64,000 nt of DNA. Origin: Haliotis cracherodii. Taxonomy: Eukaryota. Of the stretch, positions 1 to 20,247 are shown one piece after another; within the stretch, counting starts at the first letter, position 1; each line of letters begins with the position of its first letter. The notes under the pieces were generated by a model. The model was not told the DNA's origin. It was given only the letters and a program-made list of their open reading frames with translations, and did no database searches. The stretch spans positions 3,472,001 through 3,536,000 of the forward strand of contig NW_027266279.1 of the NCBI RefSeq assembly GCF_022045235.1, in the 5' to 3' direction. Both the position numbers and the translations under genes were made by a program.

Positions 1-368
1 TTTGCCACCGCCTCCTTTGCCACCGCCTCCCTTTCCACCGCCTCCATGTCCTCCTCCGCCTCCTTTGCCGCCACCCCCTCCGTGGCCACCATAGGCAGAG
101 CCAAAGAAGGCTGTGAACACTAGAAAGGAGAACAGTGCATCTGTAGTTAAATGTCTTTAAAGAACAACGCAAGAATATAGTTTTCAACCTCATAATGTTG
201 CCAATTACCTTTTGTACGCTCTTTAAGTCACGTTGTTGTAGAAAATACGCAATGAATTAAAAGATAAGTGAATTTATCAGTCCACATTTCAATAGAACTC
301 ACACAGCTCACGTTTGAAAGGTTGAACTTACCCAAGGCCACAACGAGTGCAATTTTATAGAGCTGCAT
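1..368 (-). CDS. Secreted Gly/His/Lys-rich peptide, copy 1 (3' part outside window); exon1 332-368, exon2 <1-119
   Basis: Same ATG, GTAAGT donor and TTCTAG acceptor as the other copies. Confidence 0.85.
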
Positions 369-2077
369 CTTCACAGTTACGTCTATCCACAGTAGAATAA
401 ACGGTGTGAATGATCATATAGCGAATACACAAGGCCTTTTATACAAATGGATAAGGAAATCAGGACACTATGAATCGAAATACTCCCAATGGAGAAAGAA
501 AGAGAACAAGTTCTATTTTGACTTTTTCCTTAACATGTATTTGTAAACTAACACCAGATTATATAATATCACCTTGGCATTGGAGAGTTTCATTCTTTTT
601 TATTTACGTCTTCCTGAATAACCATCAAAACCTGCTGTGCATTTGTTACGTAAGGTGGCGCCCCTTGGATGTTTCTCTGTTGGATTAAATGCAAGGTGCA
701 CTGACTCATCCAATGAATTCAAAGCAAATATGACATACAAAAAAATGAATGGACAGATGTCTATAAAATGCAAGAACAATGATTAGCTGTTAATATCCTG
801 TTACTATAGGTTTCGTTATGCAGTTTCTTGGTCCCATCAATGACTATTGTAAAAGACGTATATCTGAAATGAGCAAACAGTAGATACTGCATGCTTTTCA
901 TTTGATGAAAATACACCGATATTTATGGAATTACAACACGTACTACATGCCTCCATCGCCTTATATGCTACTCGTAGCACCACACATACACATACTGTAA
1001 GTAATATCTACTCAATAATGGACACAGAAGTGACCGTGTAGCCACTTATACACGAGATATTTACACCTTTCTGAGAAGCGTAGGGATACAATAGGGCTAC
1101 AGTCTGAAAGCAGAATATGAGACCGCTCCATGTCACACATCTGAGTTGCTTTGTTCAAAGCAGTTAAAAGAAAGCTAGACAATTAATTCAACTATTGTAG
1201 TCTGCATGTTTCAAATATTTCTTTGAGCTCTTTCCACACGATCGAAATCGCCTACCAATATATGCTGACCGCTGTAACCTGTAAGGAGCATACTATCTCC
1301 ATTTGACTCAGCAATACAGTAAACTAAATGTAATGTCAACGGTATTACATTTAAGAAGGAGTGCTAAATGACATCCTATTATGGTGTGCGGATAGTGTAT
1401 CAATGCAGTTAGCACACTGATAGTCAAATGGACAGGTGTGAAGTTAATTAGGTATGGTATGTTGCTACTTTAATACTATTGTAATTCTCCACAAGGTCAA
1501 AACTGCTAAAATGCAGAAACGTCTAAAAGTGGACAAGAACAAGGTAGATGTGAAGCATTTGGGGACGATTATGTAGGGTTGAAAATTCTTTAAATCTTGA
1601 GACAAAACATATTAGAGGGGAAGAGTTCTGTTTTTGACGCATACACAGTGAAGACAAAATGTTGAAATACATTAAAAGCAAAATGTTCTCATAGCTTAGA
1701 TATAAAGGTATTTTGCAATTATCAACGGAATCTGTTAAGCTAATTCTAGAGACGATGTGTATGATTTCACTAGTGGAAACTGATATATACCATGTATTTA
1801 CAATTCTCTTTCCGACAACACAGTCAAGTCAAGAAGTGAATTATTTGCAATGTTTAATTGTAAATTACCTTTTGTATTAGGAGGATTCATATGCCAACAA
1901 TGGTACTAAAACTAACTCTCGCTGTGCAGCTGTTTTTGTAATAAACAGGATACTGTTCTCACTATGTGCGTTTGTATTATACATCATGTACCACATAGGA
2001 GATATGTGTTTCTTCTTTGAATTTGCAGGTAAGCAGTAAGTAGATACAAAGTTGAAAAGACATATTCATTTCATGGT

Positions 2078-2083
2078 TTTATT
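2078..2083 (-). terminator. Polyadenylation signal AATAAA of Gly-rich gene, present in every unit
   Basis: AATAAA on the minus strand ~113 nt after the TAA stop. Confidence 0.7.
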
Positions 2084-2195
2084 TGAAGTCGTTTCTCAAA
2101 GTTGACATTGAATAGTGTGGTGTAGCCAACGAGGCTATGACAACGATGACATCAAATGTCCAGCATTTGATAGAAATGTGAAGAGCCTGTTGAGT

Positions 2196-2854
2196 TTAAC
2201 CATGGTGGCCACCGCCTCCATGGCCACCTCCTCCATGGCCGCTGCCACCGTGACCACCTCCGTGGCCACCACCACCGTGACCGCCGCCGCCGCCGCCGCC
2301 GCCTCCATGACCACCTCCGTGGCCGCCACCTCCATGTCCGCCGCCACCATGACCCCCACCACCTTTGCCGCCTCCTCCGTGGCCGCCACCCCCTTTGCCA
2401 CCGCCTCCTTTTCCGCCACCTCCTCCGTGGCCGCCACCTCCTTTGCCACCGCCTCCTTTGCCACCACCTCCTTTGCCACCGCCTCCTTTGCCACCGCCTC
2501 CTTTGCCACCGCCTCCCTTTCCACCGCCTCCATGTCCTCCTCCGCCTCCTTTGCCGCCACCCCCTCCGTGGCCACCATAGGCAGAGCCAAAGAAGGCTGT
2601 GAACACTAGAAAGGAGAACAGTGCATCTGTAGTTAAATGTCTTTAAAGAACAACGCAAGAATATAGTTTTCAACCTCATAATGTTGCCAATTACCTTTTG
2701 TACGCTCTTTAAGTCACGTTGTTGTAGAAAATACGCAATGAATTAAAAGATAAGTGAATTTATCAGTCCACATTTCAATAGAACTCACACAGCTCACGTT
2801 TGAAAGGTTGAACTTACCCAAGGCCACAACGAGTGCAATTTTATAGAGCTGCAT
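2196..2854 (-). CDS. Secreted Gly/His/Lys-rich peptide, copy 2; exon1 2818-2854, exon2 2196-2605; 148 aa
   Basis: Exon1 encodes MQLYKIALVVAL and ends G|GTAAGT. The acceptor is TTCTCCTTTCTAG|TG. The phase-1 join gives signal peptide MQLYKIALVVALVFTAFFGSAYG followed by GHGGGGGKGGGG...GGGGHHG*. Confidence 0.9.
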
Positions 2855-2922
2855 CTTCACAGTTACGTCTATCCACAGTAGAATAAACGGTGTGAATGAT
2901 CATATAGCGAATACACAAGGCC

Positions 2923-2929
2923 TTTTATA
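2923..2929 (-). promoter_or_regulatory. TATA box (TATAAAA) of Gly-rich gene, present in every unit
   Basis: The minus strand reads GTATAAAAGG ~70 nt upstream of the ATG, with an Inr-like TCATTC ~25-30 nt downstream. Confidence 0.75.
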
Positions 2930-4681
2930 CAAATGGATAAGGAAATCAGGACACTATGAATCGAAATACTCCCAATGGAGAAAGAAAGAGAACAAGTTCT
3001 ATTTTGACTTTTTCCTTAACATGTATTTGTAAACTAACACCAGATTATATAATATCACCTTGGCATTGGAGAGTTTCATTCTTTTTTATTTACGTCTTCC
3101 TGAATAACCATCAAAACCTGCTGTGCATTTGTTACGTAAGGTGGCGCCCCTTGGATGTTTCTCTGTTGGATTAAATGCAAGGTGCACTGACTCATCCAAT
3201 GAATTCAAAGCAAATATGACATACAAAAAAATGAATGGACAGATGTCTATAAAATGCAAGAACAATGATTAGCTGTTAATATCCTGTTACTATAGGTTTC
3301 GTTATGCAGTTTCTTGGTCCCATCAATGACTATTGTAAAAGACGTATATCTGAAATGAGCAAACAGTAGATACTGCATGCTTTTCATGTGATGAAAATAC
3401 ACCGATATTTATGGAATTACAACACGTACTACATGCCTCCATCGCCTTATATGCTACTCGTAGCACCACACATACACATACTGTAAGTAATATCTACTCA
3501 ATAATGGACACAGAAGTGACCGTGTAGCCACTTATACACGAGATATTTACACCTTTCTGAGAAGCGTAGGGATACAATAGGGCTACAGTCTGAAAGCAGA
3601 ATATGAGACCGCTCCATGTCACACATCTGAGTTGCTTTGTTCAAAGCAGTTAAAAGAAAGCTAGACAATTAATTCAACTATTGTAGTCTGCATGTTTCAA
3701 ATATTTCTTTGAGCTCTTTCCACACGATCGAAATCGCCTACCAATATATGCTGACCGCTGTAACCTGTAAGGAGCATTCTATCTCCATTTGACTCAGCAA
3801 TACAGTAAACTAAATGTAATGTCAACGGTATTACATTTAAGAAGGAGTGCTAAATGACATCCTATTATGGTGTGCGGATAGTGTATCAATGCAGTTACCA
3901 CACTGATAGTCAAATGGACAGGTGTGAAGTTAATTAGGTATGGTATGTTGCTACTTTAATACTATTGTAATTCTCCACAAGGTCAAAACTGCTAAAATGC
4001 AGAAACGTCTAAAAGTGGACAAGAACAAGGCAGATGTGAAGCATTTGGGGACGATTATGTAGGGTTGAAAATTCTTTAAATCTTGAGACAAAACATATTA
4101 GAGGGGAAGAGTTCTGTTTTTGACGCATACACAGTGAAGACAAAATGTTGAAATACATTGAAAGCAAAATGTTCTCATAGCTTAGATATAAAGGTATTTT
4201 GCAATTATCAACGGAATCTGTTAAGCTAATTCTAGAGACGATGTGTATGATTTCACTAGTGGAAACTGATATATACCATGTATTTACAATTCTCTTTCCG
4301 ACAACACAGTCAAGTCAAGAAGTGAATTATTTGCAATGTTTAATTGTAAATTACCTTTTGTATTAGGAGGATTCATATGCCAACAATGGTACTAAAACTA
4401 ACTCTCGCTGTGCAGCTGTTTTTGTAATAAACAGGATACTGTTCTCACTATGTGCGTTTGTATTATACATCATGTACCACATAGGAGATATGTGTTTCTT
4501 CTTTGAATTTGCAGGTAAGCAGTAAGTAGATACAAAGTTGAAAAGACGTATTCATTTCATGGTTTTATTTGAAGTCGTTTCTCAAAGTTGACATTGAATA
4601 GTGTGGTGTAGCCAACGAGGCTATGACAACGATGACATCAAATGTCCAGCATTTGATAGAAATGTGAAGAGCCTGTTGAGT

Positions 4682-4765
4682 TTAACCATGGTGGCCACCG
4701 CCTCCATGGCCACCTCCTCCATGGCCGCTGCCACCGTGACCACCTCCGTGGCCACCACCACCGTG

Positions 4766-4802
<37 letters not shown>

Positions 4803-5349
4803 TGACCACCTCCGTGGCCGCCACCTCCATGTCCGCCGCCACCATGACCCCCACCACCTTTGCCGCCTCCTCCGTGGCCGCCACCCCCTTTGCCACCGCC
4901 TCCTTTTCCGCCACCTCCTCCGTGGCCGCCACCTCCTTTGCCACCGCCTCCTTTGCCACCACCTCCTTTGCCACCGCCTCCTTTGCCACCGCCTCCTTTG
5001 CCACCGCCTCCCTTTCCACCGCCTCCATGTCCTCCTCCGCCTCCTTTGCCGCCACCCCCTCCGTGGCCACCATAGGCAGAGCCAAAGAAGGCTGTGAACA
5101 CTAGAAAGGAGAACAGTGCATCTGTAGTTAAATGTCTTTAAAGAACAACGCAAGAATATAGTTTTCAACCTCATAATGTTGCCAATTACCTTTTGTACGC
5201 TCTTTAAGTCACGTTGTTGTAGAAAATACGCAATGAATTAAAAGATAAGTGAATTTATCAGTCCACATTTCAATAGAACTCACACAGCTCACGTTTGAAA
5301 GGTTGAACTTACCCAAGGCCACAACGAGTGCAATTTTATAGAGCTGCAT
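4682..5349 (-). CDS. Gly/His/Lys-rich peptide, copy 3; exon1 5313-5349, exon2 4682-5100; 151 aa (poly-Gly tract G12)
   Basis: Splice sites and ORF intact; the GGC run is expanded. Confidence 0.9.
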
Positions 5350-7176
5350 CTTCACAGTTACGTCTATCCACAGTAGAATAAACGGTGTGAATGACCATAT
5401 AGCGAATACACAAGGCCTTTTATACAAATGGATAAGGAAATCAGGACACTATGAATCGAAATACTCCCAATGGAGAAAGAAAGAGAACAAGTTCTATTTT
5501 GACTTTTTCCTTAACATGTATTTGTAAACTAACACCAGATTATATAATATCACCTTGGCATTGGAGAGTTTCATTCTTTTTTATTTACGTCTTCCTGAAT
5601 AACCATCAAAACCTGCTGTGCATTTGTTACGTAAGGTGGCGCCCCTTGGATGTTTCTCTGTTGGATTAAATGCAAGGTGCACTGACTCATCCAATGAATT
5701 CAAAGCAAATATGACATACAAAAAAATGAATGGACAGATGTCTATAAAATGCAAGAACAATGATTAGCTGTTAATATCCTGTTACTATAGGTTTCGTTAT
5801 GCAGTTTCTTGGTCCCATCGATGACTATTGTAAAAGACGTATATCTGAAATGAGCAAACAGTAGATACTGCATGCTTTTCATTTGATGAAAATACACCGA
5901 TATTTATGGAATTACAACACGTACTACATGCCTCCATCGCCTTATATGCTACTCGTAGCACCACACATACACATACTGTAAGTAATATCTACTCAATAAT
6001 GGACACAGAAGTGACCGTGTAGCCACTTATACACGAGATATTTACACCTTTCTGAGAAGCGTAGGGATACAATAGGGCTACAGTCTGAAAGCAGAATATG
6101 AGACCGCTCCATGTCACACATCTGAGTTGCTTTGTTCAAAGCAGTTAAAAGAAAGCTAGACAATTAATTCAACTATTGTAGTCTGCATGTTTCAAATATT
6201 TCTTTGAGCTCTTTCCACACGATCGAAATCGCCTACCAATATATGCTGACCGCTGTAACCTGTAAGGAGCATTCTATCTCCATTTGACTCAGCAATACAG
6301 TAAACTAAATGTAATGTCAACGGTATTACATTTAAGAAGGAGTGCTAAATGACATCCTATTATGGTGTGCGGATAGTGTATCAATGCAGTTAGCACACTG
6401 ATGGTCAAATGGACAGGTGTGAAGTTAATTAGGTATGGTATGTTGCTACTTTAATACTATTGTAATTCTCCACAAGGTCAAAACTGCTAAAATGCAGAAA
6501 CGTCTAAAAGTGGACAAGAACAAGGCAGATGTGAAGCATTTGGGGACAATTATGTAGGGTTGAAAATTCTTTAAATCTTGAGACAAAACATATTAGAGGG
6601 GAAGAGTTCTGTTTTTGACGCATACACAGTGAAGACAAAATGTTGAAATACATTAAAAGCAAAATGTTCTCATAGCTTAGATATAAAGGTATTTTGCAAT
6701 TATCAACGGAATCTGTTAAGCTAATTCTAGAGACGATGTGTATGATTTCACTAGTGGAAACTGATATATACCATGTATTTACAATTCTCTTTCCGACAAC
6801 ACAGTCAAGTCAAGAAGTGAATTATTTGCAATGTTTAATTGTAAATTACCTTTTGTATTAGGAGGATTCATATGCCAACAATGGTACTAAAACTAACTCT
6901 CGCTGTGCAGCTGTTTTTGTAATAAACAGGATACTGTTCTCACTATGTGCGTTTGTATTATACATCATGTACCACATAGGAGATATGTGTTTCTTCTTTG
7001 AATTTGCAGGTAAGCAGTAAGTAGATACAAAGTTGAAAAGACATATTCATTTCATGGTTTTATTTGAAGTCGTTTCTCAAAGTTGACATTGAATAGTGTG
7101 GTGTAGCCAACGAGGCTATGACAACGATGACATCAAATGTCCAGCATTTGATAGAAATGTGAAGAGCCTGTTGAGT

Positions 7177-7832
7177 TTAACCATGGTGGCCACCGCCTCC
7201 ATGGCCACCTCCTCCATGGCCGCCGCCACCGTGACCACCTCCGTGGCCACCACCACCGTGACCACCGCCACCGCCGCCGCCACCATGACCACCTCCGTGG
7301 CCGCCACCTCCATGTCCGCCGCCACCATGACCCCCACCACCTTTGCCGCCTCCTCCGTGGCCGCCACCCCCTTTGCCACCGCCTCCTTTTCCGCCACCTC
7401 CTCCGTGGCCGCCACCTCCTTTGCCACCGCCTCCTTTGCCACCACCTCCTTTGCCACCGCCTCCTTTGCCACCGCCTCCTTTGCCACCGCCTCCCTTTCC
7501 ACCGCCTCCATGTCCTCCTCCGCCTCCTTTGCCGCCACCCCCTCCGTGGCCACCATAGGCAGAGCCAAAGAAGGCTGTGAACACTAGAAAGGAGAACAGT
7601 GCATCTGTAGTTAAATGTCTTTAAAGAACAACGCAAGAATATAGTTTTCAACCTCATAATGTTGCCAATTACCTTTTGTACGCTCTTTAAGTCACGTTGT
7701 TGTAGAAAATACGCAATGAATTAAAAGATAAGTGAATTTATCAGTCCACATTTCAATAGAACTCACACAGCTCACGTTTGAAAGGTTGAACTTACCCAAG
7801 GCCACAACGAGTGCAATTTTATAGAGCTGCAT
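7177..7832 (-). CDS. Gly/His/Lys-rich peptide, copy 4; exon1 7796-7832, exon2 7177-7583; 147 aa
   Basis: Intact. The predicted mature peptide is 124 aa: 99 Gly, 15 His, 10 Lys. Confidence 0.9.
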
Positions 7833-9615
7833 CTTCACAGTTACGTCTATCCACAGTAGAATAAACGGTGTGAATGATCATATAGCAAATACACAAGGCC
7901 TTTTATACAAATGGATAAGGAAATCAGGACACTATGAATCGAAATACTCCCAATGGAGAAAGAAAGAGAACAAGTTCTATTTTGACTTTTTCCTTAACAT
8001 GTATTTGTAAACTAACACCAGATTATATAATATCACCTTGGCATTGGAGAGTTTCATTCTTTTTTATTTACGTCTTCCTGAATAACCATCAAAACCTGCT
8101 GTGCATTTGTTACGTAAGGTGGCGCCCCTTGGATGTTTCTCTGTTGGATTAAATGCAAGGTGCACTGACTCATCCAATGAATTCAAAGCAAATATGACAT
8201 ACAAAAAAATGAATGGACAGATGTCTATAAAATGCAAGAACAATGATTAGCTGTTAATATCCTGTTACTATAGGTTTCGTTATGCAGTTTCTTGGTCCCA
8301 TCAATGACTATTGTAAAAGACGTATATCTGAAATGAGCAAACAGTAGATACTGCATGCTTTTCATTTGATGAAAATACACCGATATTTATGGAATTACAA
8401 CACGTACTACATGCCTCCATCGCCTTATATGCTACTCGTAGCACCACACATACACATACTGTAAGTAATATCTACTCAATAATGGACACAGAAGTGACCG
8501 TGTAGCCACTTATACACGAGATATTTACACCTTTCTGAGAAGCGTAGGGATACAATAGGGCTACAGTCTGAAAGCAGAATATGAGACCGCTCCATGTCAC
8601 ACATCTGAGTTGCTTTGTTCAAAGCAGTTAAAAGAAAGCTAGACAATTAATTCAACTATTGTAGTCTGCATGTTTCAAATATTTCTTTGAGCTCTTTCCA
8701 CACGATCGAAATCGCCTACCAATATATGCTGACCGCTGTAACCTGTAAGGAGCATTCTATCTCCATTTGACTCAGCAATACAGTAAACTAAATGTAATGT
8801 CAACGGTATTACATTTAAGAAGGAGTGCTAAATGACATCCTATTATGGTGTGCGGATAGTGTATCAATGCAGTTAGCACACTGATGGTCAAATGGACAGG
8901 TGTGAAGTTAATTAGGTATGGTATGTTGCTACTTTAATACTATTGTAATTCTCCACAAGGTCAAAACTGCTAAAATGCAGAAACGTCTAAAAGTGGACAA
9001 GAACAAGGTAGATGTGAAACATTTGGGGACGATTATGTAGGGTTGAAAATTCTTTAAATCTTGAGACAAAACATATTAGAGGGGAAGAGTTCTGTTTTTG
9101 ACGCATACACAGTGAAGACAAAATGTTGAAATACATTAAAAGCAAAATGTTCTCATAGCTTAGATATAAAGGTATTTTGCAATTATCAACGGAATCTGTT
9201 AAGCTAATTCTAGAGACGATGTGTATGATTTCACTAGTGGAAACTGATATATACCATGTATTTACAATTCTCTTTCCGACAACACAGTCAAGTCAAGAAG
9301 TGAATTATTTGCAATGTTTAATTGTAAATTACCTTTTGTATTAGGAGGATTCATATGCCAACAATGGTACTAAAACTAACTCTCGCTGTGCAGCTGTTTT
9401 TGTAATAAACAGGATACTGTTCTCACTATGTGCGTTTGTATTATACATCATGTACCACATAGGAGATATGTGTTTCTTCTTTGAATTTGCAGGTAAGCAG
9501 TAAGTAGATACAAAGTTGAAAAGACATATTCATTTCATGGTTTTATTTGAAGTCGTTTCTCAAAGTTGACATTGAATAGTGTGGTGTAGCCAACGAGGCT
9601 ATGACAACGATGACA

Positions 9616-10316
9616 TCAAATGTCCAGCATTTGATAGAAATGTGAAGAGCCTGTTGAGTTTAACCATGGTGGCCACCGCCTCCATGGCCACCTCCTCCAT
9701 GGCCGCCGCCACCGTGACCACCTCCGTGGCCACCACCACCGTGACCACCGCCACCGCCGCCGCCACCATGACCACCTCCGTGGCCGCCACCTCCATGTCC
9801 GCCGCCACCATGACCCCCACCACCTTTGCCGCCTCCTCCGTGGCCGCCACCCCCCTTTGCCACCGCCTCCTTTTCCGCCACCTCCTCCGTGGCCGCCACC
9901 TCCTTTGCCACCGCCTCCTTTGCCACCACCTCCTTTGCCACCGCCTCCTTTGCCACCGCCTCCTTTGCCACCGCCTCCCTTTCCACCGCCTCCATGTCCT
10001 CCTCCGCCTCCTTTGCCGCCACCCCCTCCGTGGCCACCATAGGCAGAGCCAAAGAAGGCTGTGAACACTAGAAAGGAGAACAGTGCATCTGTAGTTAAAT
10101 GTCTTTAAAGAACAACGCAAGAATATAGTTTTCAACCTCATAATGTTGCCAATTACCTTTTGTACGCTCTTTATGTCACGTTGTTGTAGAAAATACGCAA
10201 TGAATTAAAAGATAAGTGAATTTATCAGTCCACATTTCAATAGAACTCACACAGCTCACGTTTGAAAGGTTGAACTTACCCAAGGCCACAACGAGTGCAA
10301 TTTTATAGAGCTGCAT
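9616..10316 (-). CDS. Copy 5, +1 frameshift in G5->G6 run (~9850-9855): Gly/Lys N-half then Arg/Trp-rich tail (or assembly error)
   Basis: ACCCCCCTTT here versus ACCCCCTTT in the other units. ORF 9616..10068 switches frame mid-repeat. Exon1 is at 10280-10316. Confidence 0.6.
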
Positions 10317-12099
10317 CTTCACAGTTACGTCTATCCACAGTAGAATAAACGGTGTGAATGATCATATAGCAAATACACAAGGCCTTTTATACAAATGGAT
10401 AAGGAAATCAGGACACTATGAATCGAAATACTCCCAATGGAGAAAGAAAGAGAACAAGTTCTATTTTGACTTTTTCCTTAACATGTATTTGTAAACTAAC
10501 ACCAGATTATATAATATCACCTTGGCATTGGAGAGTTTCATTCTTTTTTATTTACGTCTTCCTGAATAACCATCAAAACCTGCTGTGCATTTGTTACGTA
10601 AGGTGGCGCCCCTTGGATGTTTCTCTGTTGGATTAAATGCAAGGTGCACTGACTCATCCAATGAATTCAAAGCAAATATGACATACAAAAAAATGAATGG
10701 ACAGATGTCTATAAAATGCAAGAACAATGATTAGCTGTTAATATCCTGTTACTATAGGTTTCGTTATGCAGTTTCTTGGTCCCATCAATGACTATTGTAA
10801 AAGACGTATATCTGAAATGAGCAAACAGTAGATACTGCATGCTTTTCATGTGATGAAAATACACCGATATTTATGGAATTACAACACGTACTACATGCCT
10901 CCATCGCCTTATATGCTACTCGTAGCACCACACATACACATACTGTAAGTAATATCTACTCAATAATGGACACAGAAGTGACCGTGTAGCCACTTATACA
11001 CGAGATATTTACACCTTTCTGAGAAGCGTAGGGATACAATAGGGCTACAGTCTGAAAGCAGAATATGAGACCGCTCCATGTCACACATCTGAGTTGCTTT
11101 GTTCAAAGCAGTTAAAAGAAAGCTAGACAATTAATTCAACTATTGTAGTCTGCATGTTTCAAATATTTCTTTGAGCTCTTTCCACACGATCGAAATCGCC
11201 TACCAATATATGCTGACCGCTGTAACCTGTAAGGAGCATTCTATCTCCATTTGACTCAGCAATACAGTAAACTAAATGTAATGTCAACGGTATTACATTT
11301 AAGAAGGAGTGCTAAATGACATCCTATTATGGTGTGCGGATAGTGTATCAATGCAGTTAGCACACTGATGGTCAAATGGACAGGTGTGAAGTTAATTAGG
11401 TATGGTATGTTGCTACTTTAATACTATTGTAATTCTCCACAAGGTCAAAACTGCTAAAATGCAGAAACGTCTAAAAGTGGACAAGAACAAGGCAGATGTG
11501 AAGCATTTGGGGACAATTATGTAGGGTTGAAAATTCTTTAAATCTTGAGACAAAACATATTAGAGGGGAAGAGTTCTGTTTTTGACGCATACACAGTGAA
11601 GACAAAATGTTGAAATACATTAAAAGCAAAATGTTCTCATAGCTTAGATATAAAGGTATTTTGCAATTATCAACGGAATCTGTTAAGCTAATTCTAGAGA
11701 CGATGTGTATGATTTCACTAGTGGAAACTGATATATACCATGTATTTACAATTCTCTTTCCGACAACACAGTCAAGTCAAGAAGTGAATTATTTGCAATG
11801 TTTAATTGTAAATTACCTTTTGTATTAGGAGGATTCATATGCCAACAATGGTACTAAAACTAACTCTCGCTGTGCAGCTGTTTTTGTAATAAACAGATAC
11901 TGTTCTCACTATGTGCGTTTGTATTATACATCATGTACCACATAGGAGATATGTGTTTCTTTTTTTGAATTTGCAGGTAAGCAGTAAGTAGATACAAAGT
12001 TGAAAAGACATATTCATTTCATGGTTTTATTTGAAGTCGTTTCTCAAAGTTGACATTGAATAGTGTGGTGTAGCCAACGAGGCTATGACAACGATGACA

Positions 12100-12800
12100 T
12101 CAAATGTCCAGCATTTGATAGAAATGTGAAGAGCCTGTTGAGTTTAACCATGGTGGCCACCGCCTCCATGGCCACCTCCTCCATGGCCGCCGCCACCGTG
12201 ACCACCTCCGTGGCCACCACCACCGTGACCACCGCCACCGCCGCCGCCACCATGACCACCTCCGTGGCCGCCACCTCCATGTCCGCCGCCACCATGACCC
12301 CCACCACCTTTGCCGCCTCCTCCGTGGCCGCCACCCCCTTTGCCACCGCCTCCTTTTCCGCCACCTCCTCCGTGGCCGCCACCTCCTTTGCCACCGCCTC
12401 CTTTGCCACCACCTCCTTTGCCACCGCCTCCTTTGCCACCGCCTCCTTTGCCACCGCCTCCCTTTCCACCGCCTCCATGTCCTCCTCCGCCTCCTTTGCC
12501 GCCACCCCCCTCCGTGGCCACCATAGGCAGAGCCAAAGAAGACTGTGAACACTAGAAAGGAGAACAGTGCATCTGTAGTTAAATGTCTTTAAAGAACAAC
12601 GCAAGAATATAGTTTTCAACCTCATAATGTTGCCAATTACCTTTTGTACGCTCTTTAAGTCACGTTGTTGTAGAAAATACGCAATGAATTAAAAGATAAG
12701 TGAATTTATCAGTCCACATTTCAATAGAACTCACACAGCTCACGTTTGAAAGGTTGAACTTACCCAAGGCCACAACGAGTGCAATTTTATAGAGCTGCAT
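12100..12800 (-). CDS. Copy 6, +1 frameshift right after signal peptide (~12505-12510): signal peptide fused to Arg/Trp-rich frame (or assembly error)
   Basis: CACCCCCCTCC here versus CACCCCCTCC. ORF 12100..12552. There is also an A->V change in the signal peptide. Exon1 is at 12764-12800. Confidence 0.6.
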
Positions 12801-14626
12801 CTTCACAGTTACGTCTATCCACAGTAGAATAAACGGTGTGAATGATCATATAGCAAATACACAAGGCCTTTTATACAAATGGATAAGGAAATCAGGACAC
12901 TATGAATCGAAATACTCCCAATGGAGAAAGAAAGAGAACAAGTTCTATTTTGACTTTTTCCTTAACATGTATTTGTAAACTAACACCAGATTATATAATA
13001 TCACCTTGGCATTGGAGAGTTTCATTCTTTTTTATTTACGTCTTCCTGAATAACCATCAAAACCTGCTGTGCATTTGTTACGTAAGGTGGCGCCCCTTGG
13101 ATGTTTCTCTGTTGGATTAAATGCAAGGTGCACTGACTCATCCAATGAATTCAAAGCAAATATGACATACAAAAACATGAATGGACAGATGTCTATAAAA
13201 TGCAAGAACAATGATTAGCTGTTAATATCCTGTTACTATAGGTTTCGTTATGCAGTTTCTTGGTCCCATCAATGACTATTGTAAAAGACGTATATCTGAA
13301 ATGAGCAAACAGTAGATACTGCATGCTTTTCATTTGATGAAAATACACCGATATTTATGGAATTACAACACGTACTACATGCCTCCATCGCCTTATATGC
13401 TACTCGTAGCACCACACATACACATACTGTAAGTAATATCTACTCAATAATGGACACAGAAGTGACCGTGTAGCCACTTATACACGAGATATTTACACCT
13501 TTCTGAGAAGCGTAGGGATACAATAGGGCTACAGTCTGAAAGCAGAATATGAGACCGCTCCATGTCACACATCTGAGTTGCTTTGTTCAAAGCAGTTAAA
13601 AGAAAGCTAGACAATTAATTCAACTATTGTAGTCTGCATGTTTCAAATATTTCTTTGAACTCTTTCCACACGATCGAAATCGCGTACCAATATATGCTGA
13701 CTGCTGTAACCTGTAAGGAGCATTCTATCTCCATTTGACTCAGCAATACAGTAAACTAAATGTAATGTCAACGGTATTACATTTAAGAAGGAGTGCTAAA
13801 TGACATCCTATTATGGTGTGCGGATAGTGTATCAATGCAGTTAGCACACTGATGGTCAAATGGACAGGTGTGAAGTTAATTAGGTATGGTATGTTGCTAC
13901 TTTAATACTATTGTAATTCTCCACAAGGTCAAAACTGCTAAAATGCAGAAACGTCTAAAAGTGGACAAGAACAAGGCAGATGTGAAGCATTTGGGGACGA
14001 TTATGTAGGGTTGAAAATTCTTTAAATCTTGAGACAAAACATATTAGAGGGGAAGAGTTCTGTTTTTGACGCATACACAGTGAAGACAAAATGTTGAAAT
14101 ACATTAAAAGCAAAATGTTCTCATAGCTTAGATATAAAGGTATTTTGCAATTATCAACGGAATCTGTTAAGCTAATTCTAGAGACGATGTGTATGATTTC
14201 ACTAGTGGAAACTGATATATACCATGTATTTACAATTCTCTTTCCGACAACACAGTCAAGTCAAGAAGTGAATTATTTGCAATGTTTAATTGTAAATTAC
14301 CTTTTGTATTAGGAGGATTCATATGCCAACAATGGTACTAAAACTAACTCTCGCTGTGCAGCTGTTTTTGTAATAAACAGATACTGTTCTCCGTATGTGC
14401 GTTTGTATTATACATCATGTACCACATAGGAGATATGTGTTTCTTCTTTGAATTTGCAGGTAAGCAGTAAGTAGATACAAAGTTGAAAAGACGTATTCAT
14501 TTCATGGTTTTATTTGAAGTCGTTTCTCAAAGTTGACATTGAATAGTGTGGTGTAGCCAACGAGGCTATGACAACGATGACATCAAATGTCCAGCATTTG
14601 ATAGAAATGTGAAGAGCCTGTTGAGT

Positions 14627-15282
14627 TTAACCATGGTGGCCACCGCCTCCATGGCCACCTCCTCCATGGCCGCCGCCACCGTGACCACCTCCGTGGCCAC
14701 CACCACCGTGACCACCGCCACCGCCGCCGCCACCATGACCACCTCCGTGGCCGCCACCTCCATGTCCGCCGCCACCATGACCCCCACCACCTTTGCCGCC
14801 TCCTCCGTGGCCGCCACCCCCTTTGCCACCGCCTCCTTTTCCGCCACCTCCTCCGTGGCCGCCACCTCCTTTGCCACCGCCTCCTTTGCCACCACCTCCT
14901 TTGCCACCGCCTCCTTTGCCACCGCCTCCTTTGCCACCGCCTCCCTTTCCACCGCCTCCATGTCCTCCTCCGCCTCCTTTGCCGCCACCCCCTCCGTGGC
15001 CACCATAGGCAGAGCCAAAGAAGGCTGTGAACACTAGAAAGGAGAACAGTGCATCTGTAGTTAAATGTCTTTAAAGAACAACGCAAGAATATAGTTTTCA
15101 ACCTCATAATGTTGCCAATTACCTTTTGTACGCTCTTTAAGTCACGTTGTTGTAGAAAATACGCAATGAATTAAAAGATAAGTGAATTTATCAGTCCACA
15201 TTTCAATAGAACTCACACAGCTCACGTTTGAAAGGTTGAACTTACCCAAGGCCACAACGAGTGCAATTTTATAGAGCTGCAT
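14627..15282 (-). CDS. Gly/His/Lys-rich peptide, copy 7; exon1 15246-15282, exon2 14627-15033; 147 aa
   Basis: Splice sites and ORF intact. Confidence 0.9.
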
Positions 15283-17109
15283 CTTCACAGTTACGTCTAT
15301 CCACAGTAGAATAAACGGTGTGAATGATCATATAGCAAATACACAAGGCCTTTTATACAAATGGATAAGGAAATCAGGACACTATGAATCGAAATACTCC
15401 CAATGGAGAAAGAAAGAGAACAAGTTCTATTTTGACTTTTTCCTTAACATGTATTTGTAAACTAACACCAGATTATATAATATCACCTTGGCATTGGAGA
15501 GTTTCATTCTTTTTTATTTACGTCTTCCTGAATAACCATCAAAACCTGCTGTGCATTTGTTACGTAAGGTGGCGCCCCTTGGATGTTTCTCTGTTGGATT
15601 AAATGCAAGGTGCACTGACTCATCCAATGAATTCAAAGCAAATATGACATACAAAAAAATGAATGGACAGATGTCTATAAAATGCAAGAACAATGATTAG
15701 CTGTTAATATCCTGTTACTATAGGTTTCGTTATGCAGTTTCTTGGTCCCATCAATGACTATTGTAAAAGACGTATATCTGAAATGAGCAAACAGTAGATA
15801 CTGCATGCTTTTCATTTGATGAAAATACACCGATATTTATGGAATTACAACACGTACTACATGCCTCCATCGCCTTATATGCTACTCGTAGCACCACACA
15901 TACACATACTGTAAGTAATATCTACTCAATAATGGACACAGAAGTGACCGTGTAGCCACTTATACACGAGATATTTACACCTTTCTGAGAAGCGTAGGGA
16001 TACAATAGGGCTACAGTCTGAAAGCAGAATATGAGACCGCTCCATGTCACACATCTGAGTTGCTTTGTTCAAAGCAGTTAAAAGAAAGCTAGACAATTAA
16101 TTCAACTATTGTAGTCTGCATGTTTCAAATATTTCTTTGAGCTCTTTCCACACGATCGAAATCGCCTACCAATATATGCTGACCGCTGTAACCTGTAAGG
16201 AGCATTCTATCTCCATTTGACTCAGCAATACAGTAAACTAAATGTAATGTCAACGGTATTACATTTAAGAAGGAGTGCTAAATGACATCCTATTATGGTG
16301 TGCGGATAGTGTATCAATGCAGTTAGCACACTGATGGTCAAATGGACAGGTGTGAAGTTAATTAGGTATGGTATGTTGCTACTTTAATACTATTGTAATT
16401 CTCCACAAGGTCAAAACTGCTAAAATGCAGAAACGTCTAAAAGTGGACAAGAACAAGGCAGATGTGAAGCATTTGGGGACGATTATGTAGGGTTGAAAAT
16501 TCTTTAAATCTTAAGACAAAACATATTAGAGGGGAAGAGTTCTGTTTTTGACGCATACACAGTGAAGACAAAATGTTGAAATACATTAAAAGCAAAATGT
16601 TCTCATAGCTTAGATATAAAGGTATTTTGCAATTATCAACGGAATCTGTTAAGCTAATTCTAGAGACGATGTGTATGATTTCACTAGTGGAAACTGATAT
16701 ATACCATGTATTTACAATTCTCTTTCCGACAACACAGTCAAGTCAAGAAGTGAATTATTTGCAATGTTTAATTGTAAATTACCTTTTGTATTAGGAGGAT
16801 TCATATGCCAACAATGGTACTAAAACTAACTCTCGCTGTGCAGCTGTTTTTGTAATAAACAGGATACGGTTCTCCGTATGTGCGTTTGTATTATACATCA
16901 TGTACCACATAGGAGATATGTGTTTCTTCTTTGAATTTGCAGGTAAGCAGTAAGTAGATACAAAGTTGAAAAGACATATTCATTTCATGGTTTTATTTGA
17001 AGTCGTTTCTCAAAGTTGACATTGAATAGTGTGGTGTAGCCAACGAGGCTATGACAACGATGACATCAAATGTCCAGCATTTGATAGAAATGTGAAGAGC
17101 CTGTTGAGT

Positions 17110-17750
17110 TTAACCATGGTGGCCACCGCCTCCATGGCCGCCGCCACCGTGACCACCTCCGTGGCCACCACCACCGTGACCACCGCCGCCGCCGCCGCCA
17201 CCATGACCACCTCCGTGGCCGCCACCTCCATGTCCGCCGCCACCATGACCCCCACCACCTTTGCCGCCTCCTCCGTGGCCGCCACCCCCTTTGCCACCGC
17301 CTCCTTTTCCGCCACCTCCTCCGTGGCCGCCACCTCCTTTGCCACCGCCTCCTTTGCCACCGCCTCCTTTGCCACCGCCTCCTTTGCCACCGCCTCCTTT
17401 GCCACCGCCTCCCTTTCCACCGCCTCCATGTCCTCCTCCGCCTCCTTTGCCGCCACCCCCTCCGTGGCCACCATAGGCAGAGCCAAAGAAGGCTGTGAAC
17501 ACTAGAAAGGAGAACAGTGCATCTGTAGTTAAATGTCTTTAAAGAACAACGCAAGAATATAGTTTTCAACCTCATAATGTTGCCAATTACCTTTTGTACG
17601 CTCTTTAAGTCACGTTGTTGTAGAAAATACGCAATGAATTAAAAGATAAGTGAATTTATCAGTCCACATTTCAATAGAACTCACACAGCTCACGTTTGAA
17701 AGGTTGAACTTACCCAAGGCCACAACGAGTGCAATTTTATAGAGCTGCAT
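17110..17750 (-). CDS. Gly/His/Lys-rich peptide, copy 8; exon1 17714-17750, exon2 17110-17501; 142 aa (one GGGGH unit fewer)
   Basis: Intact, with an in-frame 15-nt deletion relative to copies 4 and 7. Confidence 0.9.
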
Positions 17751-18867
17751 CTTCACAGTTACGTCTATCCACAGTAGAATAAACGGTGTGAATGATCATA
17801 TAGCAAATACACAAGGCCTTTTATACAAATGGATAAGGAAATCAGGACACTATGAATCGAAATACTCCCAATGGAGAAAGAAAGAGAACAAGTTCTATTT
17901 TGACTTTTTCCTTAATATGTATTTGTAAACTAACACCAGATTGTATAATATCACCTTGACATTGGAGAGTTTCATTCTTTTTTATTTACGTCTTCCTGAA
18001 TAACCATCAAAACCTGCTGTGCATTTGTTACGTAAGGTGGCGCCCCTTGGATGTTTCTCTGTTGGATTAAATGCAAGGTGTACTGACTCATCCAATGAAT
18101 TCAAAGCAAATATGACATACAAAAAATGAATGGACAGATGTCTATAAAATGCAAGAACAATGATTAGCTGTTATTATCATGTTACTATAGGTTTCGTTAT
18201 GCAGTTTCTTGGTCCCATCAATGACTATTGTAGAAGACGTATATCTGAAATGAGCAAACAGTAGATACTGCATGCTTTTCATTTGATGAAAATACACCGA
18301 TATTTATGGAATTATAACACGTACTACATGCCTCCATAGCTAGACAATTGATTCAACTATTATAGTCTGTATGTTTAAAATATTTCTTTGAGTTCCTTCC
18401 ACACGATAGAAATCGCGTACCAATACTTGGGGACGATTATGTAGGGTTGAGAATTCTTTAAATATTGAGAGAACACATATTAGAGGGGAAGAGTTCTGTT
18501 TTTGACCCATACACAGTGAAGACAAATGTTGAAATACATTAAATGCAAAATGTTCTCATAGGATAGATATAAAGGTATTTTGCAATTATCAATGGAATCT
18601 GTTAAGCTAATTCTAGAGGCGAAGTGTATGACGTCATCCACATCATCCGAGCCTCTCCTCAATTTCACTTGTGGCAACTATATATATACCATGTATTTAC
18701 AATTCACTTTCCGACAACACAGTCAAGAAGTGAATTATTTGCAATAATCCAGCACTTGATCCTTGCGTTCTTCGTGGAAATGACATTGCGCTGAACGGCG
18801 AAGTCCAAAGGGTCTGCATTTACATGTAGGGCAATTTCAGTCGCGTGCGTTTATGTGTTGTGTGTGT

Positions 18868-19070
18868 TTGTTTTTGTTTTTTGTTTAACGCCGCTTTCGA
18901 TTCCAGCTACATGACGTCAGTCTGTAAATAATCGAGTCTGGACCAAACAATTCACTGATTGATTTCATGAGCGAAGGTCTCCGCAATGGGTATACAATTA
19001 CATGCATCATCCAAATGAACGAGCCCGACCACCCGATCCCGTTAGTCGCCTCTTACGACAAACATAGTCG
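18868..19070 (-). mobile_element. SINE-like family A copy (5'-truncated)
   Basis: Matches the ~240-bp repeat seen at 43425, 59886, 63019 and elsewhere. Confidence 0.75.
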
Positions 19071-19682
19071 TTTCTGAAATGAATGACTATTGTGTACTGA
19101 TGTGTATAAAAGCAGTTATTTTTTACAGAAAACAATCATTCCAAACTCATAGGTTACTGAAACGTTTGACGAAACATATAACGTGACCTATATCTAGTGG
19201 TATCATTCATTTAGTGTGAACCATCAAACGACGTTGAAAAGTTGGACACGACGTCACACCCAAAGGTAAAAAGCAAACAAGGACAATTCCAATGTAATTT
19301 GTCACACACTAGCATCTAAGTTACAGTCGTCATAGAGCAAATAATTGTGCCCAGAATTTCCACAATGACTCTGGTAAGGATCTTCTTAGAAGTCATGTAT
19401 GGACGGATTATTCTCCATGTAAATACGGGGCAATGTGAGTTGAGCGGTCAAAGCAACTACGCGTCATGCCGAAGAGCCGGGTTCGGTAACTTACACAGAT
19501 TTTATTGCACGTCTCCCTTAAGAATTTTGCTAAAATTGTCAGAATAACCAGTTTCTCTCTTAAATAATGCAAATATTTTAACGAAGAATCAGCAGAAAAT
19601 CTGGCAATAAGTCTGTGAATTATGACACGGTATAATCAAAAGTAGTAGGTCTTCAATAGTTTCTTGATCATGTGTATTTTCA

Positions 19683-19707
19683 GGGGGGGGGGGGGGGGGG
19701 GGGGGGG
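19683..19707. repeat. Poly-G run (~25 nt)
   Basis: Read directly from the sequence. Confidence 0.9.
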
Positions 19708-19925
19708 TCAGATAAAACTCATTTTCACGTAAATAAATTATTTCATTGCACATTGAAAGGAAGCTGTTGGGTAGCCGACTGGTTAAACTGTTCTCTCGTT
19801 AGGTCGAAGGCCTGATTCGAGTCTCCGCATAGGAACAATGTTGAGTATTGGTAAAACCACACTCAGTCACAAGTTGATGTCATGTCCACTGCATGGTCAC
19901 ACTCAACAGAGCACTTACTGTCTGA

Positions 19926-20247
19926 GACCGCCTCCTTAGTCTAGTCGTAGAGCTTCCCCCCGGAAAGCGGAAGGTTCGGGGTTCGATCCCCGGCCGCGTC
20001 ATACTAAAAGACGTTAAAAGATGCTAAAACGGTAAAAAGGGGCTTAATCAAAGAGTCAGTATACTGTGTCTGAGTAGCGTATTCATGTTAAACTGCGGCA
20101 TGGCATCTCGGTGGACTAGCACTATAAAATCAGTCCAGACTAGTTCAAGCAGCCACTCACACACACGCACGCACGCACGCACGCACGCACGCACACACGT
20201 CGCTACAGAAGTACATTAATCTTGGAAGAAGCGTTAACCCCCAATTC
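19926..20247 (+). mobile_element. tRNA-headed SINE family D (Meta/MESC-like core), internally deleted
   Basis: A-box TAGTCTAGTCG, B-box GGTTCGATCC, then GTCATACTAAAAGACGTTAAAAGATG. Homologous to 20776-21116. Confidence 0.7.

What the first reader, a model, noticed from the sequence alone, without database searches (positions are those of the whole stretch)
1..17830. Highly homogenised tandem array of a secreted three-letter (Gly/His/Lys) peptide gene
Seen: at least 8 near-identical complete transcription units. The spliced product, which the ORF track misses, is a 23-aa signal peptide plus a ~124-aa mature chain (99 G, 15 H, 10 K in copy 4). It has a Lys-rich GGGGK N-half, a His-rich GGGGH C-half and a terminal HHG. 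Known: Gly/His-rich secreted peptides act as antifungal or antibacterial effectors (holotricin-3, tenecin-3, shepherins) or as metal-binding structural proteins (Nereis Nvjp-1, Glycera MTP, squid beak HBPs), and a terminal Gly is the PAM amidation substrate. Inference: this is a dosage-amplified, possibly undescribed cationic/metal-binding effector or biomaterial protein.
Basis: partly seen in the sequence, partly recalled or inferred. Interest (0 to 1): 0.85.

Follow-up and report, generated by a model that had tools for sequence, protein, structure and literature searches.

The report
Abalone Gly/His/Lys secreted-peptide gene array
The black abalone genome holds a real, homogenised tandem array (27 copies, 8 in this window) of a tiny two-exon gene for a secreted 9-kDa chain made only of glycine, histidine and lysine; it belongs to an apparently undescribed family of at least 116 genes whose expression and function are untested.

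Summary
Window 1-18,745 is the right end of a 27-copy, 67-kb minus-strand array with a 2.44-2.51 kb unit. The genome is Haliotis cracherodii, shown by an exact assembly-size match. Each unit has CCAAT and TATA boxes, a 37-nt exon 1, a GT..AG intron, an exon 2 of about 400 nt and an AATAAA signal. Copy 4 encodes exactly 99 G, 15 H and 10 K, with a Lys-rich N-half, a His-rich C-half and a terminal HHG.

Corrections:
- One of the 8 window copies is cut by the window edge.
- Two copies carry +1 G frameshifts.
That makes the intron 221 nt and the signal peptide 20 aa, with the same mature chain.

Three paralogous arrays share the promoter, splice sites, GH start, HHG stop and a 3'UTR block, while their introns are saturated. 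K:H ratios are 12:6, 3:27 and 0:17. This points to selection on a secreted peptide.

No homologue or paper was found. The scan found this family before on other DNA (s1-829562).

My leading reading, at about 40%, is a bulk-secreted, pH- and metal-switchable, possibly amidated polycation for host defence. A structural or mucus material is the close rival.

The parts
1..18745 (-). Right-hand end of the 27-copy tandem array (genome copies c20-c27). Homology to the unit ends in fragments at about 18,745.
   Evidence: Anchors and unit alignment; genome-wide anchor count; boundary blastn.
1..444 (-). Copy 1 (c20), cut by the window start. Exon 2 start 1-110 (119 with the alternative acceptor), intron 111-331, exon 1 332-368, TATA 435-444.
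   Evidence: The rest of exon 2 is seen in L001 and is intact.
2078..2930 (-). Copy 2 (c21), intact. AATAAA 2078-2083, exon 2 2196-2596, intron 2597-2817, exon 1 2818-2854, TATA 2921-2930.
4564..5425 (-). Copy 3 (c22), intact and the longest Gly run. AATAAA 4564-4569, exon 2 4682-5091, intron 5092-5312, exon 1 5313-5349, TATA 5416-5425.
7059..7908 (-). Copy 4 (c23), intact reference copy. AATAAA 7059-7064, conserved 3'UTR block 7133-7146, exon 2 7177-7574 (mature chain 7180-7551), intron 7575-7795 (alternative acceptor puts the exon 2 start at 7583), exon 1 7796-7832, TATA 7899-7908, CCAAT about 7947.
9542..10392 (-). Copy 5 (c24), frameshifted. An extra G in a G5 run (plus-strand C6 at 9850-9855) shifts the frame after ...KGGGGKGG into an Arg/Trp-rich frame ending at 9616. 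Exon 1 10280-10316.
12026..12876 (-). Copy 6 (c25), frameshifted. An extra G (plus-strand C6 at 12505-12510) shifts the frame after GGHGGG. It also has an Ala>Val change in the signal peptide. Exon 1 12764-12800.
14509..15358 (-). Copy 7 (c26), intact. Exon 2 14627-15024, intron 15025-15245, exon 1 15246-15282, TATA 15349-15358.
16992..17826 (-). Copy 8 (c27), intact, with one GGGGH unit fewer (15-nt deletion). Exon 2 17110-17492, intron 17493-17713, exon 1 17714-17750, TATA 17817-17826.

Best explanation
This is a genuine, selectively maintained tandem array of a two-exon gene in black abalone.

Gene structure: each unit carries its own CCAAT/TATA promoter. Exon 1 (37 nt) and the start of exon 2 encode a cleavable signal peptide. 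The rest of exon 2 encodes an intrinsically disordered chain of about 9 kDa built only from Gly, Lys and His, with a charged residue every fifth position.

How it would work (inferred):
- The Lys block is cationic at all physiological pH.
- The His block (HGGGG repeats, a predicted Gly-His N-terminus, and a conserved C-terminal His-His-Gly that could be amidated to His-His-NH2) gains charge below about pH 6.5 and can coordinate Cu/Zn/Ni.
- The product is therefore a multivalent polycation switched by pH and metal.
- The many near-identical copies serve output (dosage), not diversity.

My leading functional reading, at about 40%, is a bulk-secreted host-defence peptide of the glycine-rich / Gly-His-rich antimicrobial kind. 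It would act on anionic microbial surfaces or by metal binding, in mucus, gut or haemolymph.

Shown: the gene anatomy, copy number, composition, and conservation across paralogous arrays.
Inferred: splicing, secretion, amidation, metal binding and biological role.
For: Array and anatomy.

Selection on a coding gene:
- Four arrays share the ATG, GTAAGT donor, YYYACAG acceptor, reading frame, CAC-CAY-GGT-TAA end, AATAAA signal and an invariant 3'UTR 14-mer.
- Between arrays the intron is 43-55% identical (about random), against exon 1 at 70-81%, the signal-peptide part at 74-83%, the promoter at 60-68% and the 3'UTR at 61-72%.
- Mature chains in all four arrays use only G, H and K, although third codon positions differ at about half of aligned codons and first and second positions rarely differ.
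- All seven coding indel events within the array are multiples of 3, apart from the two +1 sites.
- GGG codons are avoided: 4 of 329 Gly codons, P about 1e-10 even against a 10% expectation.

Disorder: AF2 mean pLDDT 44, pTM 0.10.

Charge: +25 at pH 5 and +10 at pH 8.1.

Analogues with measured antimicrobial activity and matching size and composition:
- holotricin 3 and tenecin 3 (PMC5715947);
- shepherins (PMC10004757);
- acanthoscurrins and ctenidins, 8.8-10.2 kDa, cationic, C-terminally amidated (PMC6784228).

Dosage: 11 of 27 copies encode the identical product.
Against:
- A count of 116 or more homogenised copies is far beyond known antimicrobial-peptide clusters and is more typical of bulk structural products.
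- The Gly/His-only paralogue is about neutral at seawater pH, so it is not a classical cationic peptide there.
- Five of 27 copies are frameshifted.
- A terminal Gly is unsurprising in an 80%-Gly chain.
- Resemblance to known antimicrobial peptides is compositional only. No homology is detectable.
Confidence: 0.5

Rival explanations
1. Structural or matrix polycation. The peptides are made in bulk as building blocks of an extracellular material such as radula or jaw, periostracum or shell framework, or pedal adhesive mucus. They would be stored soluble at acidic pH. At seawater pH they would condense or cross-link through His-metal coordination, Lys chemistry and polyglycine hydrogen bonding, or by complex coacervation with anionic glycans. 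The four arrays with different K:H ratios would give a graded set of components.
For: - Extreme copy number with homogenisation and identical products suggests dosage rather than diversity.
- There is a K:H compositional series of 12:6, 10:15, 3:27 and 0:17.
- Gly/His-rich, disordered, pH- or metal-triggered proteins build Glycera and Nereis jaws and squid beak (PMC9999432).
- GGGGK tryptic pentapeptides and a Lys-free His half would escape standard shell proteomics. Their absence from abalone shell proteomes is therefore uninformative.
Against: - The chain has no Tyr/DOPA, Cys, Ala, Asp or Glu, which the known jaw, beak, cement and shell proteins carry.
- The chain is small (6-9 kDa, against 15-38 kDa for those proteins).
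- A conserved terminal HHG suggests a peptide-type modification.
Confidence: 0.3
2. Extracellular metal buffer or carrier. The HGGGG repeats, like the HGGGW copper sites of prion-protein octarepeats (recalled from my own knowledge, no paper read here), bind Cu(II), Zn(II) or Ni(II). This would store, detoxify or deliver metal in a copper-rich, haemocyanin-based animal.
For: - There are 13-27 His per chain, each followed by Gly runs.
- The predicted N-terminus is Gly-His and the C-terminus is His-His.
- Shepherins and histatins show Zn/Cu interactions (PMC10004757).
Against: - The Lys-rich paralogues (12 K, 6 H) are poorly explained by this reading.
- No link to metal-handling genes was seen in the flanks.
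- Nothing was tested.
Confidence: 0.08
3. Not a working gene. On this reading the G-rich block is a minisatellite inside a 2.5-kb satellite unit, the open frame and signal-like exon are fortuitous or relics, and the copy number is partly an assembly artefact.
For: - All six frames are open across the block.
- Within the array, SNP density is similar in coding and spacer DNA.
- Five of 27 copies are frameshifted.
- No expression data exist, and no protein match was found.
Against: - Gene signals are conserved across four arrays whose introns are saturated.
- Composition stays strictly G/H/K while synonymous sites are scrambled.
- Coding indels are in frame.
- The assembly is HiFi 37x at QV 62.8 (PMC9709981).
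- Every pair of units differs at 4 or more positions, so long reads can place them.
Confidence: 0.05

Closest known systems
Insect Gly/His-rich antifungal peptides (holotricin 3, tenecin 3, Sarcophaga AFP)
   Same: They are small, secreted, disordered peptides dominated by Gly and His. Holotricin 3 contains HGGGHGGGHGGGH, like array B of this family.
   Different: No detectable homology. The insect peptides also carry Gln, Pro, Tyr, Asp, Asn, Arg and other residues and have no Lys block. They are not known as arrays of 100 or more genes. Here the alphabet is strictly three letters, with 4-8 Gly between charges.
Shepherins I/II (Capsella)
   Same: The chemistry is almost pure Gly/His, the end is ...GGGGHG, and activity is modulated by Zn.
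   Different: They come from a plant. They have 28-38 residues, use a GGH period of 3 and contain no Lys. Each gene here encodes one chain with no internal processing sites.
Chelicerate glycine-rich antimicrobial peptides (acanthoscurrins, ctenidins, serrulin)
   Same: They are 8.8-10.2 kDa, more than 70% Gly, cationic through Lys, and amidated from a terminal Gly. They are active at micromolar levels against E. coli and Candida.
   Different: They contain Leu, Tyr, Phe and Arg and little His. They have no Lys/His block architecture and are unrelated in sequence.
Marine His/Gly-rich biomaterial proteins (Glycera MTP, Nereis Nvjp-1, squid beak HBPs)
   Same: They are secreted, disordered and Gly+His rich, and they assemble on a pH or metal trigger in seawater.
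   Different: They are 15-38 kDa and contain Tyr, Asp, Glu and Ala. MTP has no more than 2 consecutive Gly, and HBPs use GHGXY with Tyr. None is a Gly/His/Lys three-letter chain.
Pearl-oyster KRMP/shematrin shell-matrix families
   Same: They are small, basic, secreted molluscan proteins with Lys-rich and Gly-rich regions and rapidly evolving repeats (recalled from my own knowledge, not read here).
   Different: Those carry Tyr and Cys and are bivalve families expressed in the mantle. No homology or expression link was tested here.
The Gly/His-only array on contig C23 of the same genome (scan finding s1-829562)
   Same: It is a true paralogue with the same promoter motifs, exon structure, GH start, HHG stop and 3'UTR block.
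   Different: It has no Lys, a shorter chain (about 91 aa), a 2.8-kb unit and 46 copies.

Membership tests
Abalone Gly/His(/Lys) peptide family (four arrays, this genome) | Shared promoter motifs, 37-nt exon 1 with a phase-1 GTAAGT donor, YYYACAG acceptor, ...G|GHGGGG start, GGGHHG-TAA end, TGCTGGACATTTGA in the 3'UTR, and AATAAA. | tested here: met
   Five-sequence alignment; 98 exact pattern hits confined to four arrays; 109 hits with the 5'UTR pattern.
Insect Gly/His-rich antifungal peptides (holotricin 3 / tenecin 3) | Detectable sequence relatedness. | tested here: inconclusive
   HMMER-based searches return nothing for this low-complexity query. Composition alone cannot show homology.
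Insect Gly/His-rich antifungal peptides (holotricin 3 / tenecin 3) | Small secreted peptide dominated by Gly and His. | tested here: met
   124 aa with 80% Gly and 12% His, plus 8% Lys. The signal peptide is inferred.
Insect Gly/His-rich antifungal peptides (holotricin 3 / tenecin 3) | Antifungal activity and immune-related expression. | not testable with these tools
Chelicerate glycine-rich antimicrobial peptides (acanthoscurrin/ctenidin) | About 9-10 kDa, more than 70% Gly, net cationic. | tested here: met
   About 9.0 kDa, 80% Gly, charge +10 at pH 8.1. Comparator values come from PMC6784228.
Chelicerate glycine-rich antimicrobial peptides (acanthoscurrin/ctenidin) | C-terminal amidation from a terminal Gly. 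| not testable with these tools
   A Gly immediately precedes the stop in all four arrays. The modification itself needs mass spectrometry.
Glycera multi-tasking protein | [quoted passage not shown] | tested here: not met
   Here the chain is 9 kDa with Gly runs of 4 (17 times), 5 (3 times) and 8 (once), and no acidic residue or Ala. The definition is from PMC9999432.
Squid beak His-rich proteins | GHGXY / GAGFA pentapeptides with Tyr and hydrophobic residues that drive coacervation. | tested here: not met
   The mature chain has no Tyr, Phe, Leu, Val or Ala.
Collembolan polyproline-II antifreeze proteins | Gly-X-X tripeptide periodicity folding into a PPII bundle. | tested here: not met
   The spacing of non-Gly residues is 5, not 3. 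AF2 gives no fold, with pLDDT 44.
Shepherin-type plant GRP peptides | GGH period-3 repeats. | tested here: not met
   The period here is 5. The shepherin sequences and their Gly-Gly-His repeat motif are from PMC10004757.

The most novel reading that the evidence does not exclude
Abalone carry an undescribed, lineage-restricted extracellular system. It comprises more than 110 genes in four homogenised arrays. Together these encode a graded series of three-letter polycations, from Lys-rich to pure Gly/His. Their charge and cross-linking are set by pH and by Cu/Zn, and the chains are capped by Gly-His and His-His-amide ends. The system would work either as a metal-activated mucosal antimicrobial or as a coacervate-forming material, with gene dosage rather than sequence diversity as the adaptive variable.
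Probability: 0.45. Interest if true: 0.75.

Novelty: new variant of a known kind. Interest (0 to 1): 0.6.

Why it matters
If the genes are expressed, this would be one of the most extreme cases of a natural reduced-alphabet protein: 124 residues built from three amino acids. It would also be an extreme case of dosage amplification of a small secreted peptide in an animal.

For abalone biology, the black abalone is critically endangered and was devastated by a bacterial disease. A bulk-secreted cationic, metal-binding peptide family would be an obvious candidate for mucosal or haemolymph defence.

For biomaterials, a natural series of (GGGGK)n-(GGGGH)n diblock polycations is a ready-made model for assembly switched by pH and metal.

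For genome evolution, the array shows three things together: homogenisation, more divergent edge copies, and avoidance of GGG codons, with frameshifts arising exactly at the few GGG codons that remain.

Tried and rejected
- Protein homology with the exon 2 product found nothing. None of 8,000 candidates scored at E<=0.001. At E<=10 only plant or bacterial RNA-binding glycine-rich proteins appeared, which I take as chance.
- The ESM Atlas gave no usable hit.
- Exact-sequence look-ups of the full precursor were therefore not done.
- Literature: there were no hits for GGGGH or GGGGK strings. GGGHHG and GGGH repeats turned up only in holotricin 3, shepherin II and one untested nematode candidate. 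Neither abalone shell proteome reports a Gly/His protein. A 2025 review lists no such abalone antimicrobial peptide.
- Rfam on 1-20,000 found nothing.
- AF2 on the mature chain gave no fold.
- The spacer ORFs are short and are not conserved between arrays.
- Flanks: only Tc1/mariner remnants and minisatellites, so there are no informative neighbours.
- AP-1-like and other promoter motifs are not conserved between arrays, except for the CCAAT and TATA boxes and a few short blocks. I rejected them as evidence for any particular regulation.
- I treat the Arg/Trp-rich frameshift product as a by-product of GGN to NGG re-reading, not as a designed switch. This is untested.


Full report
**What is in the sequence**

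The first 18.7 kb of the window is a head-to-tail array whose gene lies on the minus strand. Exact anchors at the start codon recur at window 368, 2854, 5349, 7832, 10316, 12800, 15282 and 17750, with spacing of 2,468-2,495 bp. The seven full units are 99.4-99.8% identical. Homology to the unit continues about 1 kb beyond the last start codon and breaks up at about 18,745.

Each unit reads, 5' to 3' on the minus strand:
- a CCAAT box;
- GTATAAAAGG (TATA box) about 70-75 nt upstream of the ATG;
- a 37-nt exon 1 encoding MQLYKIALVVAL plus one base;
- a GTAAGT donor and an intron;
- an exon 2 of about 400 nt ending CAC CAT GGT TAA;
- an AATAAA signal about 115 nt further on.

Copy 4's mature chain (window 7180-7551, minus strand) is 124 residues with 99 Gly, 15 His and 10 Lys, exactly as stated.
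- Lys sits in the N-half and His in the C-half (K:H 9:3 against 1:12).
- A non-Gly residue occurs every fifth position in 17 of 24 intervals.
- The only adjacent pair of non-Gly residues is the terminal His-His before the last Gly.

Three corrections are needed.
1. Copy 1 is cut by the window start. It is intact in the genome.
2. Copies 5 and 6 each have one extra G in a G5 run (plus-strand C6 at 9850-9855 and 12505-12510). They shift into an Arg/Trp-rich frame that stays open past the normal stop.

**Whose genome, and how big the array is**

The window is G000:C16:3,472,001-3,536,000 in an assembly of 1,182,234,246 bp in 80 pieces. The published black abalone (Haliotis cracherodii) primary assembly is 1,182,252,637 bp in 81 scaffolds, and its mitochondrial genome is 18,391 bp (PMC9709981). 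The difference between the two totals is exactly 18,391 bp and one record, so this is that assembly without the mitogenome. It was built from PacBio HiFi at 37x plus Omni-C, with base QV 62.8.

In the genome the start-codon anchor occurs 27 times, all in one block at C16:3,425,711-3,489,763. The window therefore shows only the right-hand eight copies.

I fetched the remainder and aligned all 27 units.
- The leftmost copy is an edge copy at about 97.5% identity.
- The rest form three blocks (c02-06, c07-18, c19-27) that are 99.4-99.6% identical within a block and 98.9-99.4% between blocks.
- Many variants are shared patchily between non-adjacent copies, as expected with gene conversion or unequal exchange.
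- Eleven copies encode the identical product, and 22 of 27 reading frames are intact.
- Every pair of units differs at four or more positions, so HiFi reads could place them. I could not check read depth.

**The frameshifts**

The five broken copies use only two sites: c04 and c25 share one, and c06, c09 and c24 share the other. They sit on different unit backgrounds.

Both sites are G5 runs created by two of the only three GGG codons in the gene. Across representatives of the four arrays GGG is almost absent, at 4 of 329 Gly codons. GGA, GGC and GGT are used about evenly.

I read this as selection or mutation pressure against slippage-prone runs, with the residual runs being where frames actually break. 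In a HiFi assembly these are more likely real alleles spread by conversion than consensus errors. Only reads can settle the point.

The Arg/Trp-rich frame is what any GGN repeat gives when read as NGG. I do not treat it as designed.

**A family of at least 116 genes**

A DNA search of the genome with one unit found three more arrays, all on the minus strand. A pattern spanning the stop codon and a 3'UTR block (CACCAYGGTTAAA, 27-33 nt, TGCTGGACATTTGA) hits 98 times, and only in four places.

| Array | Location | Pattern hits | Unit | Mature chain | G / H / K |
|---|---|---|---|---|---|
| A (this array) | C16:3.42-3.49 Mb | 9; the other 18 copies do not match the exact pattern | about 2.45-2.5 kb | 124 aa | 99 / 15 / 10 |
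| B | C16:4.974-5.021 Mb | 16 | about 3.1 kb | 119 aa | 89 / 27 / 3 |
| C | C16:5.231-5.295 Mb | 27 | about 2.28 kb | 85 aa | 67 / 6 / 12 |
| D | C23:68.440-68.587 Mb | 46 | about 2.8 kb | 91 aa | 74 / 17 / 0 |

A 5'UTR pattern gives 109 hits. All 100 listed places lie in the same four arrays; the remaining 9 were not listed. With A's 27 copies the total is at least 116.

All four products start ...G|GHGGGG after the predicted signal-peptide cleavage and end GGGHHG-stop. This matches an earlier finding of this scan on the C23 array (s1-829562, which gives 'at least 119 genes in four arrays'). I recounted the arrays independently.

**Is it a real gene?**

I had no RNA evidence. The case therefore rests on comparative anatomy.

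Aligning one unit from each array shows conservation of:
- the CCAAT and TATA boxes;
- the ATG and the 37-nt exon with its TTGG|GTAAGT donor;
- a polypyrimidine tract with ACAG acceptor;
- the reading frame, the HHG-TAA end, an invariant 3'UTR 14-mer, and AATAAA.

By region, identity between array A and arrays B, C and D is as follows.

| Region | Identity, A vs others |
|---|---|
| Intron | 43-55% (no better than chance alignment) |
| Downstream flank | 43-54% |
| Exon 1 | 70-81% |
| Signal-peptide part of exon 2 | 74-83% |
| Promoter | 60-68% |
| 3'UTR | 61-72% |

In protein-guided codon alignments, third positions differ at about half of the codons while first and second positions rarely differ. 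For A against C the differences by codon position are 4, 2 and 42 over 85 codons. The caveat is that protein guidance forces Gly-Gly pairing. The alignment-free version of the same point is that, after this much divergence, not one residue other than G, H or K occurs in the four representative mature chains.

Within array A the seven coding indel events (3, 12, 15, 15, 15, 18 and 27 nt) are all multiples of three, unlike the spacer indels. All six frames are open over the G-rich block. Only the G/H/K frame joins exon 1 in phase and ends at the conserved stop.

I conclude this is a functional gene family under purifying selection on a secreted product, with about 0.9 confidence.

**Splice site**

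The acceptor 9 nt downstream (TTCACAG|CC in A; TTTACAG or TTCACAG in the others) is present in all four arrays and is also in frame.

So the intron is 221 nt and the signal peptide is 20 aa (MQLYKIALVVAL-A-FFGSAYG) if the shared site is used. They are 212 nt and 23 aa if the upstream one is used. Arrays A and C may use both. The mature chain is the same either way.

Cleavage after ...AYG / ...xLG fits the -3/-1 rule in all four arrays and gives a Gly-His N-terminus. This is an inference, as no predictor was available.

**What it probably does**

The chain has no fold (AF2 mean pLDDT 44, pTM 0.10). It also has no Cys, aromatic, acidic, Ser/Thr or Pro residues and no dibasic processing sites.

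Estimated net charge falls from about +25 at pH 5 to about +10 at pH 8.1. The Gly/His-only paralogue goes from +16 to about 0.

The chemistry is therefore that of a flexible, multivalent polycation with one permanently charged block (Lys) and one block switched by pH and metal (His).
- HGGG units are the copper-binding core of prion octarepeats. This is from my own knowledge and was not checked in a paper here.
- The predicted Gly-His N-terminus and His-His C-terminus would also be expected to bind metal. This too is my own reasoning and was not checked in a paper here.
- A Gly directly before the stop is the substrate for peptidyl-glycine amidation. Glycine-rich spider and scorpion peptides of the same size are amidated in this way (PMC6784228).

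Two readings compete.

*Host defence (my leading reading, about 40%).* The nearest things in the literature by size and composition are antimicrobial: holotricin 3, which contains HGGGHGGGHGGGH, and tenecin 3 (PMC5715947); the shepherins, almost pure Gly/His, ending GGGGHG and Zn-modulated (PMC10004757); and the acanthoscurrins and ctenidins. The conserved HHG end also looks like a peptide-type modification signal.

*Bulk material or mucus component (about 30%).* More than 100 homogenised copies with identical products point to dosage, as for structural secretions. The graded K:H series across arrays resembles a set of material components. His/Gly-rich disordered proteins that assemble on a pH or metal trigger build worm jaws and squid beak (PMC9999432). 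However, this chain fails their defining features: it has no Tyr, Ala or acidic residues, it has long Gly runs, and it is only 9 kDa.

A metal-buffer role (about 8%) and a non-functional satellite (about 5%) are minor alternatives.

**Novelty**

I found no homologue and no paper describing a Gly/His/Lys peptide family in abalone or any mollusc. The searches are limited.

I class it as a new variant of a known kind (glycine-rich / Gly-His-rich secreted peptides). It is convergent rather than homologous. Its distinguishing features are the strict three-letter alphabet, the Lys/His diblock, the capped ends, and the unprecedented copy number. The scan had already met the family on other DNA.

**Surroundings**

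Right of the array the window holds Tc1/mariner transposase remnants at 25663-26082 and 35622-36323. It also holds several large minisatellites and no recognisable gene. Rfam finds nothing in 1-20,000.

Noticed in passing
window 9850-9855 and 12505-12510; also genome copies c04, c06 and c09 (L008, L003): The +1 G frameshifts recur at just two sites in 5 of 27 copies, on different unit backgrounds. Both sites are G5 runs made by two of the gene's three GGG codons. The shifted frame is Arg/Trp-rich and stays open to 9616 in copy 5.
   Followed up: partly
window 7180-7551 (-) and L004, L005, L007 equivalents: GGG is almost never used for Gly (4 of 329 codons), while GGA, GGC and GGT are used about evenly. 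This is consistent with avoidance of slippage-prone or G-quadruplex-prone runs.
   Followed up: partly
window 7133-7146 and the same place in every copy (2152, 4638, 9616, 12100, 14583, 17066): A 3'UTR 14-mer, TGCTGGACATTTGA (minus strand), is invariant in all 98 pattern-matched genes of the four arrays, although the surrounding UTR has diverged. It is a candidate regulatory (RNA-binding or miRNA) site.
   Followed up: no
window 7575-7583 and the equivalent in every copy: There are two in-frame acceptors 9 nt apart (CTAG and ACAG). Only the downstream one is conserved in all four arrays. A third AG 21 nt further upstream lies right after a branch-point-like TTTAAC.
   Followed up: partly
window 7133-7657 (-): An ATG inside the intron opens a 174-aa ORF in the Arg/Trp-rich frame across exon 2. 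It would be read only from an unspliced transcript and is probably meaningless.
   Followed up: no
L009 (C16:3,423,342-3,425,719), outside the window: The leftmost copy of the array is clearly more diverged (about 97.5% against about 99.4%) and carries His>Arg at the third residue of the predicted mature chain. This is the usual escape of edge copies from homogenisation.
   Followed up: partly
window 27568-29564, 30401-32966, 44571-44976, 51923-52360, 54020-54405, 59305-59885: Large minisatellites lie right of the array: 48 bp x 42, 44 bp x 58, 36 bp x 11, 44 bp x 10, 97 bp x 4, and 50/92 bp x 6-11.
   Followed up: no
window 25663-26082 (-) and 35622-36323 (+): These ORFs match the Tc3-type transposase HTH domain (PF01498; the first passes the Pfam cut-off, the second is weak at E 0.0094, below it). 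They are Tc1/mariner remnants flanking the array.
   Followed up: partly
whole genome G000: The assembly size equals the published Haliotis cracherodii primary assembly minus its 18,391-bp mitogenome, to the base. This identifies the organism without any sequence search.
   Followed up: yes
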